NCBI RefSeq assembly: GCF_032191835.1 | Contig: NC_083236.1 | Span: forward strand, 39,618,001-39,682,000 | Direction of reading: 5' to 3' | From: Heteronotia binoei | Taxonomy: Eukaryota | Length of the DNA stretch: 64,000 nucleotides | Shown here: one piece after another, positions 6,985 through 57,031 of the stretch | How positions within the stretch are numbered: position 1 is the first letter of the stretch | Layout: each line of letters starts with the position of its first letter | Notes under the pieces: model-generated | What the model was told of the DNA's origin: nothing | The model's database searches: none | Seen by the model: only the letters and a program-made list of their open reading frames with translations | Position numbers and translations under genes: made by a program

Positions 6985-7740
6985 CACATACTGGAAGGAA
7001 TAGAACAAAATAGGAGTCAATTGCACCTTTAAGACCAACTTAGTTTTATTCAGAAAGTAAGCTTTCATGTGCATGCACACTTCTTCAGATGAAGAATGAG
7101 GTACAGTAAGCAGAGAAACATATAGCTTGTGGGGTTTGGAATGCCAAGTGGTACGAAGTTAAAATCCAATAGCAGAATAGTAAAATTAACAAATTCAGAA
7201 AACCTTTGATCTGGGTTGTATTAGCGTGGGAAACCATAAAACAGCAACATGTCAGAATGTGAGCATGCCTGTTAATTATTCTATTGCTAATAAACCTGGG
7301 TCAAAAAGAAGGCATTTCTTTCCCAGAAGTTTTTCCTGTCCAACTAATTTACCTTTTAACATGTGACATTCATCATTCTAGTTTGCCATTAGGAAAAAAT
7401 AGTGAAAGATTGGTTTAGTATATATAATGAGATAAACAGCCAATATCCCTTGTTTGAGTATGTCAATACCAAAGCATTATTCTGATACACTATCCTAAAA
7501 GAGAAATACATTGGGATACTGTGCATATATCACCATACTTGGTGAAAGTGGGTTTAGCATTTGTAATGAGGTTCAAAACAACAGCTCTGTTCAGTCCTAG
7601 GGAGGTTTTTGTTCCAAGTTTCATAATAGTTTGTAATTCAGCAATTCCCCTCTCCATTCTGTTCTTGAAATTCTGAGAGTGGGTTTAGCATCTGTAATGA
7701 GATAAAAAACAATATCCCTGTTCAGTCCTGGGGAGGTGTT
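6985..7740 (-). mobile_element. Penelope-like element, 3' part (end of EN ORF and pLTR region)
   Basis: The minus strand has GLNRD-like ORF termini and the pLTR motif CTGAAGAAGTGTGCATGCACATGAAAGCTTAC...GTTGGTCTTAAAGGTGC. It continues at 12131 across the inserted element. Confidence 0.8.
7058..7090 (-). ncRNA. Minimal hammerhead ribozyme motif of the Penelope pLTR (probably decayed)
   Basis: The minus strand reads CTGAAGA-a-GTGTGC-at-GCACAT-GAAA-GCTTA: CUGANGA and GAAA cores, stem II and a palindromic AGCT stem III. Confidence 0.6.
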
Positions 7741-7741
7741 T

Positions 7742-8139
7742 GCCCCCCCAGTCGGAATGAAGAGGCAGACACAGGAATTGGGTTTAAAACCGGGCCGCTT
7801 TATTAATCACATAACACTGTAACTGGCAGGGGGTGAAACCTGAACCAGACAAGCCCTGGGGTCAACACCTGGACCCCGCCTTGTCCAAAGGGCGAGCCAC
7901 CCTGCCCCCAGCACAAGCCCGCCGTATTCGGGTTGTAGCTGAGCGGCCAGGCCTGTAGCCATCACTATCTGGGCTGGCATCGATCCCCATGGAAAGATCC
8001 GACCAGGTGAGGCTCCCTGTGATCTGCATCACCGCACTGAGCCGTGTAGCCCATCTACGGTTCCTGCAGACCACCGCACCAACGGTGCTAGGCCATAGGT
8101 GCTCCCCTGGAAAACCCTGTGGCCAAACCTCCTCCAGCC
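7742..8139 (-). repeat. Split direct repeat B2 (398 bp)
   Basis: Copy of 8486-8883. It contains minus-strand AATAAA near the element's 3' end. Confidence 0.95.
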
Positions 8140-8305
8140 TGCGACCTTAACCATTACCGTAACAAAACTAAACTAACCGGTAGTACAAGGTAGGCAAAAA
8201 ACATCCCCACGATGGCCAATTGTGTGGAGATGAAAAAATTCCTACCTGGCCCCTAATAAGGCGACCAGCATACGCCTGTACTACCGAAAGGGACGGGTGG
8301 GCGGG

Positions 8306-8485
8306 CAGAGAGCCAAAGTAACTGCGTGCCGGGGAGCGGGGGCCGGGGCTTATATAGCCCCGGCTCCCGCCTACAACAAACACCCGTATGTGGGGTGATA
8401 TTGCCCCTCCCTCCTTCCGGGGCGGCAAAGGCGGCCCCCAGCCCGAGCGCCGGGAAGCCGGCTTGGCTGGGAGGGGCCGGACATT
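8306..8485 (-). repeat. Split direct repeat A2 (180 bp)
   Basis: Copy of 11951-12130. Confidence 0.95.
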
Positions 8486-8883
8486 GCCCCCCCAGTCGGA
8501 ATGAAGAGGCAGACACAGGAATTGGGTTTAAAACCGGGCCGCTTTATTAATCACATAACACTGTAACTGGCAGGGGGTGAAACCTGAACCAGACAAGCCC
8601 TGGGGTCAACACCTGGACCCCGCCTTGTCCAAAGGGCGAGCCACCCTGCCCCCAGCACAAGCCCGCCGTATTCGGGTTGTAGCTGAGCGGCCAGGCCTGT
8701 AGCCATCACCATCTGGGCTGGCATCGATCCCCATGGAAAGATCCGACCAGGTGAGGCTCCCTGTGATCTGCATCACCGCACTGAGCCGTGTAGCCCATCT
8801 ACGGTTCCTGCAGACCACCGCACCAACGGTGCTAGGCCATAGGTGCTCCCCTGGAAAACCCTGTGGCCAAACCTCCTCCAGCC
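8486..8883 (-). repeat. Split direct repeat B1 (398 bp)
   Basis: Copy of 7742-8139. It abuts A2 to form the internal end-to-start (circle-type) junction GGACATTGCCCCCCC. Confidence 0.95.
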
Positions 8884-9039
8884 ACCGCCAATGCCAAGCC
8901 TCTGCTTAGGCATTAGCGCCCCACCGGGTGGCCCAGAGCCAACCGAACCCCCTGCCCTAACCACTAAAAGGCCCGGCTGCCCAACTCAAAAACGCCATCT
9001 GGCCGATACCGGTCAGCCTACTAGCACAGCAGGGGCGTA

Positions 9040-9300
9040 ATCCCAAGACAGCAGTAGCCCCGCACTGAGGCCAGGTTGGGTGCCCCCCCGGACCGTCTGG
9101 CGAAATGGGAAAACATAAAACCGTGCTGCGCCCGCAGATGAGAACCGACGTCACTCACCGCGAGCCTAGCATCTGAAAAACAAACAGCAGTCAGCATAAA
9201 CAACAATACAACCAAAAGAGCCCCCTACCCCCACTAGGTAACCAGAGGGCAATGTAAGTTCGGCCGGCCGCAGAGCGCCGCCTGCTCATGTGCCAGATGG
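9040..9300 (-). pseudogene. Degenerate remnants of the YR C-terminus (9251-9298) and an SGNH-hydrolase-like ORF (about 9040-9150)
   Basis: IWHMSRRRSAAGRTYI resembles the YR end motif GRWxSxAYxxYIR. VLICGRSTVL...ARRSGG...TQPGLS (frameshifted) resembles the Ngaro hydrolase start as I recall it. Not database-verified. Confidence 0.45.
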
Positions 9301-10827
9301 CGGAGTGCCATCGGGCGGATGGGGGTAGGCCCCTTTACCAGGTGGCTGCTGCCCGCCCCCGCTGCCCCCGGGGGTCTTACCTCCCGGTCTGGATGTAGAT
9401 CTACTACAGGCCGAAAGTGCGTGGGCCCCGCTGCAGAGCGGGCACTCATGCCGGAACTTACAAGGTTTCCTGGGGCACGCACCCTTAGCTGCGAATTCCC
9501 AACATAATGGCCGGGACTGGGCTGACTGGCCCGGGGTATCACAGGCCCCTGTAGAGCACTGCTGCTGCTGCAACCTCTGCACCAGATGGCCACTGTCGGC
9601 CCTATCTCCAGCATTTGGTTTTGCCGGGGACATCAATTGCAACCACAGTTGCTGATTTATTTGGTCCCAGGGCATCCCAGGGTTCACAGCGGCCCTCATG
9701 CGGAAGGCCTCGTCGTACTGCAGCCATGCCGCACCGACGAAGTCTGTATAGGCCCTATAAACAATATCTATATATTGAAAAAGGGCCGCCGCACGTGCCT
9801 GCTGCGCTCTCGCAATGACTCCGGCATAGATGAGGAAACCGGGCAACCAGTTTGCCCAGGACCGATCTACCTTCCTGCGTTTTAGCTTTTCCTTCTCCTT
9901 GTCATCGAGCTCGTCCTTATTTTTCTTTTCGAGCTCTCTGAAAAGGAGGCTAAACACGTCCACATATTCCCCCCGGAGAATTCTCTCCCGCGTGGCGGCC
10001 GTCAGGTGATCGCCCAGAGGCAAGGAAGTATCACCATAGGGGAGAATATGGAAAGGGATATTCGCATAAGGGTTGGGGGGGTAAAACCACCCACTGCCTT
10101 GGACCGCTGGCCACGTCCCCTGAAATTGTCCCAGCTGCTGACCACCCCATGGCAAAACCCCAGGAGTGGGCAGGGAGGCGGGGGCAGTAGGTGGCGCCAC
10201 AGCGCCCACCTGCTGACCCACAGGGGAAAAAACTGAACTAGGCAGCGGGCCCGGTGTATGAAGACCCCAAGCCCACTGCTGAACAGAGCTCGACTGCTCC
10301 CCCGCTCCAAAATGCCCGGCCACCCCCGCTACTCCGCCCACCGGCGACGGGTGAGGAGGAAGTTGAATGGGGCCCCAAGGCCACCCCTGAACTGGCGGAA
10401 AGGGAGGCTTACCACCATCGCCCGGAAAGACACCAGCACCTCCAGGGGTCTGCGGCCCACCGCTGCCAGATGCGCCGCCACCCGATGGCACGCCCGAAGG
10501 GCCCTCCTCCGGATCCTCCTCCTGATCAGGTTCCGACAGTGCTTCAGGCTCAGACGGCCCACCCTGTAATGCAGATAACCGAGCAAGCAACTCCGATTCA
10601 AAAGTAAGCCGCGCCGACCGGCCGGTGGCACGGCGACGCCCCCCCCAAATGGGAGCGCCCCTGGCAACTCTGTCCTGTTCCAGGGCATCCAGCTGGCTCA
10701 TAATAGCCAGCCTAACCTGCTCACTTTGCCCCGCTTCGTTAGCTGGAGTTCCCTGTTGGCCCCGCCCCCGAGGTGGGCGGGCGGGCTGCTTCCCCTTTAA
10801 CTTGCCCTGCCCTTTTCGTGGTGCCAT
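9286..10827 (-). CDS. gag: Gag-like ORF1 of the YR retroelement (513 aa)
   Basis: Uninterrupted ORF with a basic N-terminus, LGDHLTAATRERILRGEYVDVFSLL, WLQYDEAFRMRAA and a C-terminal Cys/His finger CWEFAAKGACPRKPCKFRHECPLCSGAHALSAC, typical of DIRS/Ngaro ORF1. Confidence 0.85.
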   Translation of the reverse strand: MAPRKGQGKLKGKQPARPPRGRGQQGTPANEAGQSEQVRLAIMSQLDALEQDRVARGAPIWGGRRRATGRSARLTFESELLARLSALQGGPSEPEALSEPDQEEDPEEGPSGVPSGGGASGSGGPQTPGGAGVFPGDGGKPPFPPVQGWPWGPIQLPPHPSPVGGVAGVAGHFGAGEQSSSVQQWAWGLHTPGPLPSSVFSPVGQQVGAVAPPTAPASLPTPGVLPWGGQQLGQFQGTWPAVQGSGWFYPPNPYANIPFHILPYGDTSLPLGDHLTAATRERILRGEYVDVFSLLFRELEKKNKDELDDKEKEKLKRRKVDRSWANWLPGFLIYAGVIARAQQARAAALFQYIDIVYRAYTDFVGAAWLQYDEAFRMRAAVNPGMPWDQINQQLWLQLMSPAKPNAGDRADSGHLVQRLQQQQCSTGACDTPGQSAQSRPLCWEFAAKGACPRKPCKFRHECPLCSGAHALSACSRSTSRPGGKTPGGSGGGQQPPGKGAYPHPPDGTPPSGT

Positions 10828-11950
10828 CCTATAACCGCTATCGGCACGGGCTGCAACAGGACAGAGAATGGTACCCCGGCCACCAAGATTCCCTCACTGC
10901 CTCTCCCACCAACACTTGTATGGTGTTAGGACCGTGCAGCTAAAAAGGGGGGGGGGGTCACAAGCTCCCAATCAAGCTCAGGAACGGCAGCACAACCCCA
11001 CGACAGCAGCCTGCATCCACAGGCTCCCTGCCCCCAACGAAAGCTAAGGGGTGGGGGGGGGTAACCAAAGGACCAGCCCAGCCCCAAGCCACAAGCCGCA
11101 CTCCTGGAAGGCAGGCCCAGGCTATCCAGCCAGAGAAGAGAAAGCGGGGGGGGGGGGAGGGAGGCACGAGCTCCCTACCCACTAGGCGACCTAGCGCCCC
11201 GCCCCTCGCAAGGGACAGCAGCAATATAACGGGGCCCGGGGTGGCAGGAGGCACCACCAACCCGCAAAACCCCCACCCCGAAAAAGGCCTCTGCCTGGGA
11301 AACCGCCGGCCACTCGCGCTTCCGTTAATGAGGGGCCGCTGCGCGTTGCCCCTAAAGAGAAAAGGCTACCGCCCCACACAAAGCCGACCGCCCGCGTTCT
11401 CCCAACGAGGGGCCGTTGCGCACTGACCGCTCGAAGAAAAGAATGAGCGCCGAGAGCCCCAGCCACTAAAATGCCGCCCCGGCTCAGCCGCCCAAGGACT
11501 GCCCCGCCACGCAGCTGCCGCACTGGCCCTGCACTCCCCAGCTCGCCGCGCCGCGCCTGTAAAGGCCGCTGCGCGTTGTCCCCGAGGGAAAGGCTAGTGC
11601 CGTATAACTGTGAACCGCCTGCGCTTCCCCCCAACCGGGGCCGCTGCGTGCCGTCCCCCGAAGAAAAGAATAAGCGACGGTGGCTCCCAGTCGTCACACT
11701 GCCGCCCAGAAGCAGCCCCCCAGGGGCTGCGCAATAACAGCCGCCGCGCTGGCCCAGCCCGACTCGGCCACCCCAACGATACCGCCGACCCGCGACCAAA
11801 TCTCCAGCCTCGCCAGCGCCTGACAGCCGCCGCCCGCGCCTTCGCCCAGCGCCAAGACCAACGCCGCGCTGCTTTCGATGCTCCCGCCGCCGACGTCCCT
11901 TGACACTAAGGCCTCGCCGCGCTGGACCGCGATCGCACGTGGCTCTCGAA

Positions 11951-12130
11951 CAGAGAGCCAAAGTAACTGCGTGCCGGGGAGCGGGGGCCGGGGCTTATAT
12001 AGCCCCGGCTCCCGCCTACAACAAACACCCGTATGTGGGGTGATATTGCCCCTCCCTCCTTCCGGGGCGGCAAAGGCGGCCCCCAGCCCGAGCGCCGGGA
12101 AGCCGGCTTGGCTGGGAGGGGCCGGACATT
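11951..12130 (-). repeat. Split direct repeat A1 (180 bp) with TATA box
   Basis: Copy of 8306-8485. It contains minus-strand TATATAA about 30 nt before an Inr-like CAGTT. Confidence 0.9.
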
Positions 12131-12776
12131 GTTTCAAGTTTCATAATAATTTATAATTCAGCAATTTATCTCTCCATTTTGTTCTTGAAGTTCCTTTGCA
12201 GTAAAACAGCTACTTTGAGGTCACCCATTGAATGCTTTGGAAGGTTAAAGTATTCCCCCACAGGTTTCTCAGTTCTGTAATTCCTGATGTCAGATTTGTG
12301 TCCATTTATCCTTTGGCAGAGGGTTTGTCCTGTTTGCCCTATGTAGAGATCTGAAGGGCATTGTTGACATTTAATGGCATATATAATGTTGGAAGATGAG
12401 CAAGTGAATGAGCCTAAGATGGTGTAGTTAATGCTGTTAGGTCCAGTGATTGTGTTGTCTGGGTGTATGTGGCAGCAAAGTTGGCACTTGGGTTTATTGC
12501 AAGCTCTAGTGAGGAGTTGTTTGAGATTAGGGGGTTGTCTGTGCGCAAGAAAAGGTTTACCCCCCAGTACTTTTGAAAGAGAGCTGTCACTATTCAATAG
12601 AGGTTGTAAGTTGTTGATGATACGTTGAACTGTTTTCAGTTGAGAGTTGTGTGTGACCACTAGTGGTGTTCTGTTATTGTCTTTTTTTGGGTTTGTCTTG
12701 TAACAGGTTTTCTCTGGGTATCATTCTGGCTTTGTTAATCTGTTTCCTGATTTCATCAGGTGGGTACTTTAGTTCC
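12131..12776 (-). mobile_element. Penelope-like element: linker and GIY-YIG endonuclease region
   Basis: ORF 12166-12660 has FTCSSSNIIYAIKCQQCPSDLYIGQTGQTLCQRINGH, a GIY-YIG domain with the PLE CCHH motif. The element is 5'-truncated near 12776. Confidence 0.9.
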
Positions 12777-12859
12777 AAAAAGCTTTGTTGTAGATACTGG
12801 AAGGAAGTCACAGGTTATAATGTAAAAGGTACCCCAAAACTGAAAAAAAAAAATACAAC

Positions 12860-13277
12860 TTAACCTGATTTTATGAACCTGTGGGCACCTTTGGAATTCT
12901 GACACAGGGTGGTGGGCACAAACACAAAATGGTTGCCACAGGAGGTGGAGCCAGTCACAAAAGGGGTGCTTGGAGGAGGCAGAGCCACATGCACAGAGGA
13001 AGCTCAAATGCACAAGAAAAAGGGGGAGGATAACTTTTAAAAAATATATTGGAGAGGAGAAGTGAGATAGAAATAAACCAACAAAGTGGTGGCAGCTGCA
13101 ACTGAAGCATCATTTTAATCTGTCTAGCTAATCGGATCTCTACAGGACAATCAGAAACTCTGTGGGGCAAATGCCTGACCTGGCCTCACCTACTTTCTAA
13201 CAACACTTGTTGGATACCAGGAAAGTTGCCCTTGGACACTGTGGCTCCCACAGGCATCACATGGGGGACTCATGGTT
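12860..13277. mobile_element. hAT-type non-autonomous element (family of 3643-4269)
   Basis: Shared AACCTGTGGGCACCTTTGGAATTCTGACACAG start and GGCTCCCACAGGC end motifs. Confidence 0.55.
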
Positions 13278-55464: not shown

Positions 55465-56245
55465 TTGCCCCCCCAGTCAGAATGAAGAGGCTGACACAAT
55501 ATGTTGGATAAACCGGGCTGCTTTATTAAATATAACTTAATGAACTAGAACGGCAAGGGGTATAGGCCTAACAGGACAAGCCCTGGGGTCAAACGCAGGA
55601 CCCCACCTTGTCCTTAGAGGGCTAGCCACCTTGCCCCCAGCACGAGCCCAATATTCTGGCTGGTGCTGAGCGACCAGGCCCAAACTCCACCTCCACCTAG
55701 GCCAGCATCAATCCCTCTGGAAAGATCTGCCCCGGTGAGGCTTTGCCGTGATCTGTACTCCCAGCATTGAGCTGTACAGCCCATCTGCAGTTCATACAGA
55801 CAACCTGCACCTACCGGTACAGGGCCATAGGTGCTCCCCTGAACAAACACTGTGGCCCATACCTCATCCTGCCCAGCGACCAAACTAATAAACTCCTCCC
55901 CAAAACTCCTAACACTATCAGGCAGTACAAGGTAGGCGAAAAACAAATTCACATGGGCCAATTCTGTGAAAATGAAAAAATTCCTACCTGGCCCCTAATA
56001 AGGCGACCAGTGATAACCTGTACTGCCAAAGGGTGGGCGGGCGGGCGGGCTGAGAGCTGAAAGGCAAGTGTGACACGTTGAGTGGGGCCGGGGCCTTTAT
56101 AGCCCCAATGCCACACCCGATGAGCCTTCCTGGCTGCCATATGAGGCAGGGCCAGCCTTCCCTCCTTCCAGGAGGGCAACAGCAGCCCCCAGCCTCTAGC
56201 CAGCGATACCAGCGATGCCGGCGTGGCTGGGAAGGGGCCGATCTT
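55465..56245 (-). mobile_element. Solo A-spacer-B unit of a related Ngaro/PAT-type element
   Basis: Collinear with 7740-8485 (TTGCCCCCCCAGTC.GAATGAAGAGG ... AAATTCCTACCTGGCCCCTAATAAGGCGACCAG ... GGCTGGGA.GGGGCCG) but diverged. It has no gag and no TSD. Confidence 0.85.
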
Positions 56246-57031
56246 CTTTGGATACAGGAGTTGGGAGAGGTCCATCTTTGTGTTCCTGTGCACTAGATGG
56301 GCCAGTCACCTGACTTTATATAAGGGATCTTCATAAGTTCACAAATTGTGTTATTTAATCTATGATCATTTACACAAGCACCCTGTGTCTTGAGGCAGCC
56401 ACATTTGGAAAACTGTATACAGTTCCATTTGCTGACTCTCAAACAGAACACTGTCTGCTACCATATAGCAGGAAAAGACAATCACAACAGTCAAGGAGTT
56501 GTGGCATCTTCCCTCCAAGAAAAGGCTAAATAATTTTAAAAAAATAGTTTAGACAAAGTTTGGCTAATAAAAGGCACAATTCTGATTATGTATGTTTTTC
56601 GGAAAGTGGATCAGGTTAACTGTTTCTCCCATAATCATATCATGTGAACTCCCAATGTAGTAGATAGGTAGTTGATTCTAGACAGGGCAAAGAAATAAAT
56701 TATTTGCTCAAATAGTAATCAGTTTGTGGAATTCAGAGTCAATGATCATGGTCCTTTAAAGGGGTATATATAGTATTCATTGAAATAAAATCCATTAATA
56801 CCTATTAACCATGATACCTACGTGGAGTCTCCCATATTCAAATGGCTGAGCCTGCCATCTTTGTTATGGGTGGAGTAATAAAGGAAGACCCAGCTGCTGT
56901 CCCCTTATTATAGATCTCTGGATATAATTTGGTTGGCCTCCTTGGAAAACAAGTTGTTAGACTAGATGGAACATTGATCTGATTCAGAATGGTTGCTGAA
57001 TCAAGTGAGAGATGTCCATGTGTGAACTAGC

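What the first reader, a model, noticed from the sequence alone, without database searches (positions are those of the whole stretch)
7740..12131. Recently mobile gag-only tyrosine-recombinase retroelement (non-autonomous Ngaro/PAT type)
Seen: complete split-direct-repeat architecture (A1-internal-B1-A2-spacer-B2) with A copies identical and B copies differing at one of 398 nt. The 513-aa gag with its Cys/His finger is intact, yet only about 400 bp lie between gag and B1. Known: autonomous Ngaro/PAT elements carry gag, RT/RH and YR (plus a hydrolase in some vertebrates) in that interval. Inference: the enzyme-gene remnants are heavily degraded while the repeats are near-identical and gag is open. 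This suggests a lineage that lost its enzymes long ago, still transposes using a partner's RT/YR, and keeps its own Gag (for example for cis-preferential packaging). I do not know of this being described for squamate YR elements.
Basis: partly seen in the sequence, partly recalled or inferred. Interest (0 to 1): 0.78.

Follow-up and report, generated by a model that had tools for sequence, protein, structure and literature searches.

The report
Young gag-only Ngaro-type retrotransposon copy
This is a very recently inserted 4.4-kb jumping gene of the tyrosine-recombinase (Ngaro-type) kind that keeps its end repeats, promoter, poly(A) signal and an intact Gag gene but has no enzymes, so it must have been copied and inserted by another element's enzymes.

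Summary
On the minus strand, 12131..7740 is a complete split-direct-repeat element. A1 and A2 (181 nt) are identical; B1 and B2 (400 nt) differ at one base. A 166-nt spacer separates A2 from B2. One 513-codon ORF is open, and 402 nt lie between its stop and B1.

An adjacent 131-bp tandem-repeat unit acts as an empty site. It shows a precise insertion with no target duplication, at a 3-nt core (TTG on plus, CAA on the element strand). The same core sits at the internal B1/A2 junction.

The ORF belongs to a very large family (6651 clusters). Some members are fused to a reverse transcriptase or a tyrosine recombinase, so calling it Gag is justified. I found no RT, RNase H or recombinase remnant.

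CpG content (0.46-0.89 against 0.07-0.09 in the flanks) and the near-identical repeats point to a young insertion.

This scan's unchecked notes report two further gag-only Ngaro-like elements (4215 and 4457 nt) elsewhere in this genome.

Verdict: a new variant of a known kind, of moderate interest.

The parts
11951..12131 (-). A1, the 5' split direct repeat (181 nt). It holds a TATATAA box at 12001..11995, about 45 nt before the end of A.
   Evidence: 100% identical to 8306-8486; TATA position; sequence.
10828..11950 (-). 1123-nt leader, G+C 0.67, CpG o/e 0.83, with no convincing ORF. An acceptor-like tract (ctctgtcctgttgcag) lies 24 nt before the gag ATG, and there is a 115-nt internal repeat at 74% identity.
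   Evidence: its ORFs have no Pfam hits.
9286..10827 (-). Gag-family ORF, 513 aa. The N-terminal half is disordered and P/G-rich; the helical core is at about residues 263-420.
9406..9504 (-). Zinc fingers: CCCH (C-x8-C-x4-C-x3-H, residues 442-460) followed by a CCHC-like knuckle (C-x2-C-x3-H-x5-C, residues 462-474).
   Evidence: The fingers are conserved in the homologues. CCCH Pfam families hit several relatives, and there is a weak MBNL1 match.
8884..9285 (-). 402-nt non-coding stretch between the gag stop and B1. It holds an acceptor-like tract ending in tttttcag (9180..9173) and a donor-like GGTGAGT at about 9159.
8484..8883 (-). B1 (400 nt), with AATAAA at 8548..8543.
   Evidence: 99.75% identical to 7740-8139.
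8306..8486 (-). A2 (181 nt), overlapping B1 by the 3-nt core 8484-8486. It holds a second copy of the TATA box at 8356..8350.
8140..8305 (-). 166-nt spacer. It folds into a long hairpin in which two U6 runs face each other in an internal loop between a GGUAGG/CCUACC stem and a 9-bp stem.
   Evidence: Fold energy -55.2 kcal/mol, z = -2.24. The region is 84% conserved in the second copy, with one compensatory pair.
7740..8139 (-). B2, the 3' terminal repeat. AATAAA lies at 7804..7799, followed by a TGTGTCTG downstream element. About 35-45 nt of B lie past the likely cleavage site.
7543..7739 (.). Left flank, made of 131-bp tandem-repeat units. Unit 7543-7673 serves as a paralogous empty site. 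The repeat continues at 12132-12193 on the other side of the element.
   Evidence: With the element removed and one TTG left, unit 2 is exactly 131 nt and aligns without gaps at 86% to unit 1.
55465..56250 (-). Related solo A-spacer-B unit (about 77% identical), with its own TATAAA and AATAAA and the same ...GGGGGGGCAA terminus.

Best explanation
This is a non-autonomous, gag-only derivative of a split-direct-repeat (Ngaro-type) tyrosine-recombinase retrotransposon that inserted recently.

Shown:
- The full A1...B1A2-spacer-B2 architecture is present.
- There is a TATA box near the 3' end of A, and an AATAAA with a GU-rich element near the 3' end of B.
- The gag-family ORF is intact and has two zinc fingers.
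- There is no RT, RH or YR.
- The insertion is precise, has no target-site duplication, and lies at a 3-nt core (CAA) that also forms the internal B1/A2 junction.

Inferred mechanism (the published Ngaro/PAT model):
- RNA starts about 20-25 nt before the end of A1 and is polyadenylated inside B2, so it lacks most of A and the tail of B.
- During reverse transcription the internal B1-A2 junction supplies the missing ends and gives a circle with one B-CAA-A junction.
- A tyrosine recombinase then crosses that junction with a genomic CAA.

The element encodes neither enzyme, so both must come in trans from an autonomous Ngaro of the same genome. The element supplies only the cis signals and its own nucleic-acid-binding Gag. 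Whether many copies share this structure, that is whether it is a true lineage, is likely but was not shown here.
For: - Repeats.
- Core and empty site. The junctions read GGTGT-TTG-CCC (left), GGACA-TTG-TTTCAAG (right) and GGACA-TTG-CCCCCC (internal). The reconstructed unit is 131 nt and 86% identical to its neighbour.
- Signals.
- Gag family: the profile search found 6651 clusters at E<=1e-3.
- Link to a recombinase: the ORF matches P0151 (gag core plus Phage_integrase) at 5e-26.
- Link to a reverse transcriptase: the ORF matches P0143 (gag core plus an RT-like C-terminus, Atlas RVT_1 and Dam/RT clusters with TM 0.76-0.87) at 5e-25.
- Full-length homologues of 416-561 aa in geckos and a cordylid share the start, the core and both fingers.
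- No RT/YR similarity anywhere else in the element or the window.
- Youth: 1 difference in 581 repeat positions; CpG o/e 0.46-0.89 inside against 0.07-0.09 in the flanks.
- The published model requires near-identical A and B pairs at insertion (PMC6681497).
- A diverged solo A-spacer-B with the same CAA ends shows that the family has been in this genome for some time.
- Unchecked leads: notes s1-321206 and s1-321269 report further gag-only Ngaro-like elements of 4457 and 4215 nt at other places in this genome.
Against: - No second copy with the same gag/B1 junction was examined, so a one-off deletion is not excluded.
- No autonomous partner with matching A/B ends was identified.
- A search with the Gag N-terminus (residues 1-135) found no Gag-N/esterase fusion of an autonomous relative.
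- An intact ORF in a copy this young says nothing about selection.
- B1 and B2 both lie in the genomic RNA, so their near-identity is not a clean clock.
- The Gag core model (pLDDT >90) matches no solved capsid or other fold. 'Gag' therefore rests on position, fingers and fused relatives.
- Superfamily placement (Ngaro versus PAT-like) cannot be made without an RT.
- No expression data could be obtained.
Confidence: 0.62

Rival explanations
1. This is a one-off deletion derivative. An autonomous Ngaro copy lost its RT-RH-YR (and esterase) block, either by template switching during the reverse transcription that produced this copy or by a deletion after insertion. On this view the locus is a dead end and not a member of a propagating gag-only lineage.
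For: Only one such copy is visible in the 64-kb window. Internal deletions are common among retroelement copies (general knowledge).
Against: The deletion would have to remove 3 kb or more while leaving the gag stop, all of B1 and every cis signal untouched, in a copy with only 1 repeat difference. No pol-like coding remnant flanks the junction. Two unchecked notes describe similar-sized gag-only Ngaro-like elements elsewhere in the genome.
Confidence: 0.22
2. This is a retrotransposed subgenomic (spliced) RNA of an autonomous Ngaro. The enzyme block was removed as an intron and the spliced RNA, which still carries both ends, was reverse transcribed and integrated. Such copies would arise repeatedly from the autonomous parent.
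For: Follow-up notes of this scan argue that Ngaro elements of this genome are spliced. The post-gag stretch contains a strong acceptor-like tract at 9180..9173 and a donor-like GGTGAGT at about 9159.
Against: According to those notes the donor lies 125-138 codons into gag, so a spliced RNA would lack most of gag, yet gag here is full length. A processed junction should have lost its donor and acceptor signals. No RNA data could be obtained.
Confidence: 0.06
3. This is a host gene derived from gag (domestication) that only happens to lie between repeats.
For: Relatives are annotated as multi-isoform 'uncharacterized protein' loci in Hemicordylus and Eublepharis.
Against: The element has a complete SDR architecture with its own TATA and poly(A) signals. 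It is a precise insertion into a tandem-repeat unit of a Penelope-like element tail, with a paralogous empty site. Its CpG content is that of a newcomer.
Confidence: 0.03

Closest known systems
Ngaro-like retrotransposons (DIRS order), e.g. DIRS-53_XT of Xenopus tropicalis
   Same: Split direct repeats A1...B1A2...B2, of a size comparable to DIRS-53_XT's A (236 bp) and B (152 bp), both 100% identical in that element (PMC9210276). A gag-like first ORF. No target-site duplication. Vertebrate host.
   Different: No RT/RH, no tyrosine recombinase and no SGNH hydrolase ORF. Only 402 nt follow gag. The leader before gag is 1.1 kb.
SIRE, the non-autonomous derivative of VIPER in Trypanosoma cruzi
   Same: A non-autonomous derivative of a split-direct-repeat YR retroelement that keeps the ends of its parent (PMC6681497).
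   Different: SIRE is about 435 bp and has no ORF. This element is 4.4 kb and keeps a full, open gag.
TR-GAG elements of plants (non-autonomous LTR retrotransposons with only a GAG ORF)
   Same: Terminal repeats plus a single gag ORF and no pol, presumed to be mobilised in trans (PMC4350172, abstract). This is the closest functional analogue.
   Different: TR-GAG elements are LTR/integrase elements of plants with a PBS and PPT. This one is a recombinase-type element of a reptile with split repeats, and it inserts without a target duplication.

Membership tests
Ngaro-like / split-direct-repeat YR retrotransposons (DIRS order) | Split direct repeats A1 ... B1-A2 ... B2, with A1=A2 and B1=B2 | tested here: met
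   A is 181 nt and 100% identical; B is 400 nt and 99.75% identical, in the canonical order.
Ngaro-like / split-direct-repeat YR retrotransposons (DIRS order) | Encodes a tyrosine recombinase | tested here: not met
   No Pfam hit in any ORF of the element. tblastn with the YR-bearing relative P0151 finds only the gag core.
Ngaro-like / split-direct-repeat YR retrotransposons (DIRS order) | Encodes RT/RNase H of the Ngaro clade | tested here: not met
   Only 402 nt lie between gag and B1, and there is no similarity to the RT part of P0143. The superfamily cannot therefore be assigned by RT phylogeny.
Ngaro-like / split-direct-repeat YR retrotransposons (DIRS order) | Gag-like first ORF homologous to ORF1 of YR retroelements | tested here: met
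   BLASTP gives 5e-26 to P0151 (core plus recombinase) and 5e-25 to P0143 (core plus RT-like domain). The family has 6651 clusters.
Ngaro-like / split-direct-repeat YR retrotransposons (DIRS order) | Insertion by recombination: no target-site duplication, and a short core shared by the target and the internal junction | tested here: met
   The paralogous empty site in the 131-bp tandem repeat holds a single TTG. TTG is also present at the left end, the right end and the B1/A2 junction.
Non-autonomous gag-only retroelement lineage (functional analogue of TR-GAG) | Several copies at different loci share the same pol-less structure | not testable with these tools
   The source genome is not searchable. 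There are only unchecked notes of two further gag-only elements.
Non-autonomous gag-only retroelement lineage (functional analogue of TR-GAG) | gag is under purifying selection among the pol-less copies | not tested
   No DNA of other copies was available. Protein-level conservation across species holds for the gag family as a whole, not for a gag-only lineage.

The most novel reading that the evidence does not exclude
Geckos may harbour a propagating, gag-only branch of Ngaro retrotransposons. It would have shed RT, RNase H, recombinase and esterase, and would survive by borrowing them, while selection keeps its own zinc-finger Gag, for example to package its own RNA in preference to the helper's. 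That would be a Gag-encoding parasite of a recombinase retrotransposon. I found nothing like it described for any YR retroelement.
Probability: 0.35. Interest if true: 0.6.

Novelty: new variant of a known kind. Interest (0 to 1): 0.42.

Why it matters
How tyrosine-recombinase retrotransposons replicate is known mostly from models. A young copy with an empty-site paralogue, a clear 3-nt crossover core, and readable promoter and poly(A) positions gives those models concrete, testable coordinates.

If gag-only copies form a lineage, this would be the first helper-dependent but Gag-encoding YR retroelement. It would also allow a natural experiment on whether Gag acts in cis in this poorly understood order.

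The Gag core is a confident helical domain shared by thousands of protein clusters, and it has no Pfam family and no solved relative.

Tried and rejected
No copy-number, junction or RNA evidence from reads was obtained, and read laying was not used.
- The metagenome scan gave five loci with the gag core only. None was informative about pol or repeats.
- The viral-contig scan found nothing.
- Pfam found no family for the ORF, nor for any other ORF of the element.
- The PDB sequence search gave only a weak CCCH match to MBNL1.
- The AlphaFold model was searched against the PDB. Foldseek found nothing at E<=0.001, and the best VIA-align hit had Z 5.1, a generic helical bundle. No capsid-like fold can be claimed or excluded.
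- The Gag N-terminus search found only a chimeric Heteronotia binoei model with an 88% identical piece.
- tblastn for RT/YR remnants in the leader, the post-gag stretch and the spacer found nothing credible.
- Rfam gave only sub-threshold chance hits.
- The exact ORF is not in the protein collection.
- One literature search was too broad to be useful.
- Lookups in the scan's own notes by sequence and by core/junction words came back blank, which means nothing.
Full report
**Anatomy**

A self-comparison of 7000-13000 gives two repeat pairs.
- 7740-8139 matches 8484-8883: 400 nt with one mismatch, G8710 against A7966.
- 8306-8486 matches 11951-12131: 181 nt, identical.

The only long ORF (10827..9286, 513 aa) lies on the minus strand, so the element reads 12131 to 7740:
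- A1, 12131..11951
- leader, 11950..10828 (1123 nt)
- ORF, 10827..9286
- non-coding stretch, 9285..8884 (402 nt)
- B1, 8883..8484
- A2, 8486..8306
- spacer, 8305..8140 (166 nt)
- B2, 8139..7740

This is the split-direct-repeat order A1...B1A2...B2 that defines Ngaro-, PAT- and VIPER-like elements (PMC9210276; PMC6681497).

**Insertion site**

The flanks are units of a 131-bp tandem repeat. They lie just downstream of a Penelope-type GIY-YIG ORF (12166-12660, minus; Pfam GIY-YIG E 2.7e-4, below the family cut-off).
- Removing 7743-12131 leaves a unit of exactly 131 nt that aligns without gaps at 86% to the neighbouring unit 7543-7673.
- The trinucleotide TTG occurs once in the empty unit. It occurs at both ends of the element and at the B1/A2 overlap (8484-8486).
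- On the plus strand the junctions read GGTGT-TTG-CCC, GGACA-TTG-TTTCAAG and GGACA-TTG-CCCCCC.

So there is no target-site duplication, and the internal B1/A2 junction looks like the joint of a circle that recombined with the target inside a 3-nt core. This is what a tyrosine recombinase would produce. It is an inference from the sequence and from the published model.

**Signals**

- A carries TATATAA at 12001..11995 and again at 8356..8350, about 45 nt before the end of A.
- B carries AATAAA at 8548..8543 and 7804..7799. It is followed by TGTGTCTG, and about 60 nt of B remain after the hexamer.
- A transcript from A1 to B2 would therefore lack most of A and the tail of B. Both are present in the internal B1-A2 junction. 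This fits the reverse-transcription model, which needs the repeat pairs to be near-identical at insertion (PMC6681497).
- These start and end positions are predictions.

**The ORF**

- Pfam gives nothing for it.
- A word search found 11 relatives. They include full-length 416-561-aa 'uncharacterized proteins' of Eublepharis macularius (55-59% identity) and Hemicordylus capensis.
- It also found 87-88% identical pieces inside chimeric gene models of Heteronotia binoei. The source genome is therefore probably a gecko.
- The alignment shows a shared start (M-x-x-K-G...KGK), a variable P/G-rich half, a strongly conserved core (about residues 263-420) and two conserved fingers: CCCH at 442-460 and a CCHC-like knuckle at 462-474.
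- A profile search of 1.84 billion representatives found 6651 clusters at E<=1e-3 and 2592 at E<=1e-10.
- Two hits extend past the core. P0151 continues into a tyrosine recombinase (Phage_integrase E 1e-3, with HxxR and a C-terminal Y). P0143 continues into a domain whose nearest Atlas clusters are RVT_1 families, including Dam/RT (feature score 0.94; TM 0.76-0.87). Pfam and the PDB sequence search do not themselves call that domain.
- The window ORF matches these two at 5e-26 and 5e-25 over 132-135 residues.
- This ties the ORF to the first ORF of YR retroelements, which is the basis for calling it Gag.
- An AlphaFold model built on 147 sequences is confident for the core and the fingers (pLDDT above 90). 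It has no convincing solved relative: Foldseek found nothing at E<=0.001 and the best VIA-align hit had Z 5.1 among generic helical bundles. A capsid-like fold is neither shown nor excluded.

**What is missing**

- No other ORF of the element hits Pfam.
- tblastn with all 157 collected proteins, including the RT- and YR-bearing ones, finds only gag in the whole window. It finds nothing credible in the leader, the post-gag stretch or the spacer even at E<=10.
The enzyme block is simply absent.
- The post-gag stretch does contain an acceptor-like tract (tttttcag, 9180..9173) and a donor-like GGTGAGT (about 9159). The leader ends in an acceptor-like tract 24 nt before the ATG. Their meaning is open.

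**Age**

- There is one difference in 581 repeat positions.
- CpG o/e is 0.46-0.89 in every part of the element against 0.07-0.09 in both flanks. That is a strong sign that the element has spent little time as methylated genomic DNA.
- With squamate neutral rates of about 1e-9 per site per year (my own knowledge), one difference corresponds to the order of a million years or less.
- B1 and B2 are both copied from the RNA, so their identity is not a strict clock.

**Family history in the window**

A second, 77%-identical unit at about 56250..55465 (minus) consists of A, spacer and B only. It has its own TATAAA and AATAAA, the same GGGGGGGCAA end, and a CAA at its 5' edge. It is best read as the product of A1 x A2 recombination, the analogue of a solo LTR. 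This shows an older, diverged subfamily with the same core.

**Lineage or one-off**

- The source genome is not searchable here.
- A search with the Gag N-terminus found no Gag-N/esterase fusion that would point to an autonomous partner with the same Gag.
- The scan's own index lists two unchecked first-reader notes on other pieces of this genome. One is 'Gag-only Ngaro-like element with intact split direct repeats and a recombination trinucleotide' (4457 letters, s1-321206). The other is 'Young non-autonomous Ngaro derivative that kept only an intact Gag' (4215 letters, s1-321269).
- Several follow-ups describe autonomous Ngaro elements with an SGNH esterase in the same genome.
- If these notes hold, the gag-only form recurs at similar length and helpers exist. 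I count this as a lead, not as evidence.

**Comparison with what is known**

- Non-autonomous derivatives of split-repeat YR elements are known (SIRE from VIPER, PMC6681497), but they carry no ORF.
- Gag-only non-autonomous elements are known among plant LTR retrotransposons (TR-GAG, PMC4350172).
- A full-text search for Ngaro with 'non-autonomous' and 'gag' returned 14 papers, none about a gag-retaining YR derivative.
- The element therefore works like a TR-GAG built on an Ngaro chassis.
- It fails the enzyme criteria of the Ngaro family and can only be filed as a derivative. Its superfamily is inferred from the repeat architecture and the host.

**Verdict**

It is a new variant of a known kind and of moderate interest. 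Interest would rise if the copy census and dN/dS support a selected, propagating gag-only lineage.

Noticed in passing
window 8140-8305 (-), core about 8190-8262: The spacer between A2 and B2 folds into a long hairpin in which two U6 runs face each other across an internal loop, between a GGUAGG/CCUACC stem and a 9-bp stem (z -2.24). It is conserved in the diverged copy at 55909-56045, with one compensatory pair. It resembles the ENE-like poly(A)-binding element that earlier notes of this scan report in Ngaro 3' spacers.
   Followed up: partly
window 55465-56250 (-): A solo A-spacer-B unit of a related subfamily (about 77% identical) with CAA at both edges. It is the split-repeat analogue of a solo LTR, probably formed by A1 x A2 recombination.
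   Followed up: partly
window 12166-12660 (-) and 7543-7739 / 12132-12193: A Penelope-like element tail. There is a 164-aa ORF with a GIY-YIG domain (E 2.7e-4, just under the Pfam cut-off), followed by 131-bp tandem repeats. The Ngaro-type element inserted into the second repeat unit.
   Followed up: partly
window 10828-11950 (-): An unusually long (1123 nt) CpG-island-like leader (G+C 0.67, CpG o/e 0.83). It has a 115-nt internal repeat (11334-11449 / 11564-11676, 74%) and an acceptor-like tract 24 nt before the gag ATG. It may be a 5'-UTR intron or a regulatory or packaging region.
   Followed up: no
proteins P0009 and P0011 (Heteronotia binoei): The annotated 'TRIM42' and 'semaphorin-6A-like' models begin with exons that are 87-88% identical to pieces of this Gag (residues 43-110 and 269-323). 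Copies of the family are thus being drawn into host gene models, or into transcripts, in another gecko.
   Followed up: partly
Gag core, ORF residues about 263-420 (window about 9568-10041, -): A confidently folded helical domain (pLDDT >90) shared by 6651 protein clusters. It has no Pfam family and no solved structural relative, and in relatives it is linked both to a reverse transcriptase with DIRS-type Dam/RT neighbours (P0143) and to a tyrosine recombinase (P0151).
   Followed up: partly
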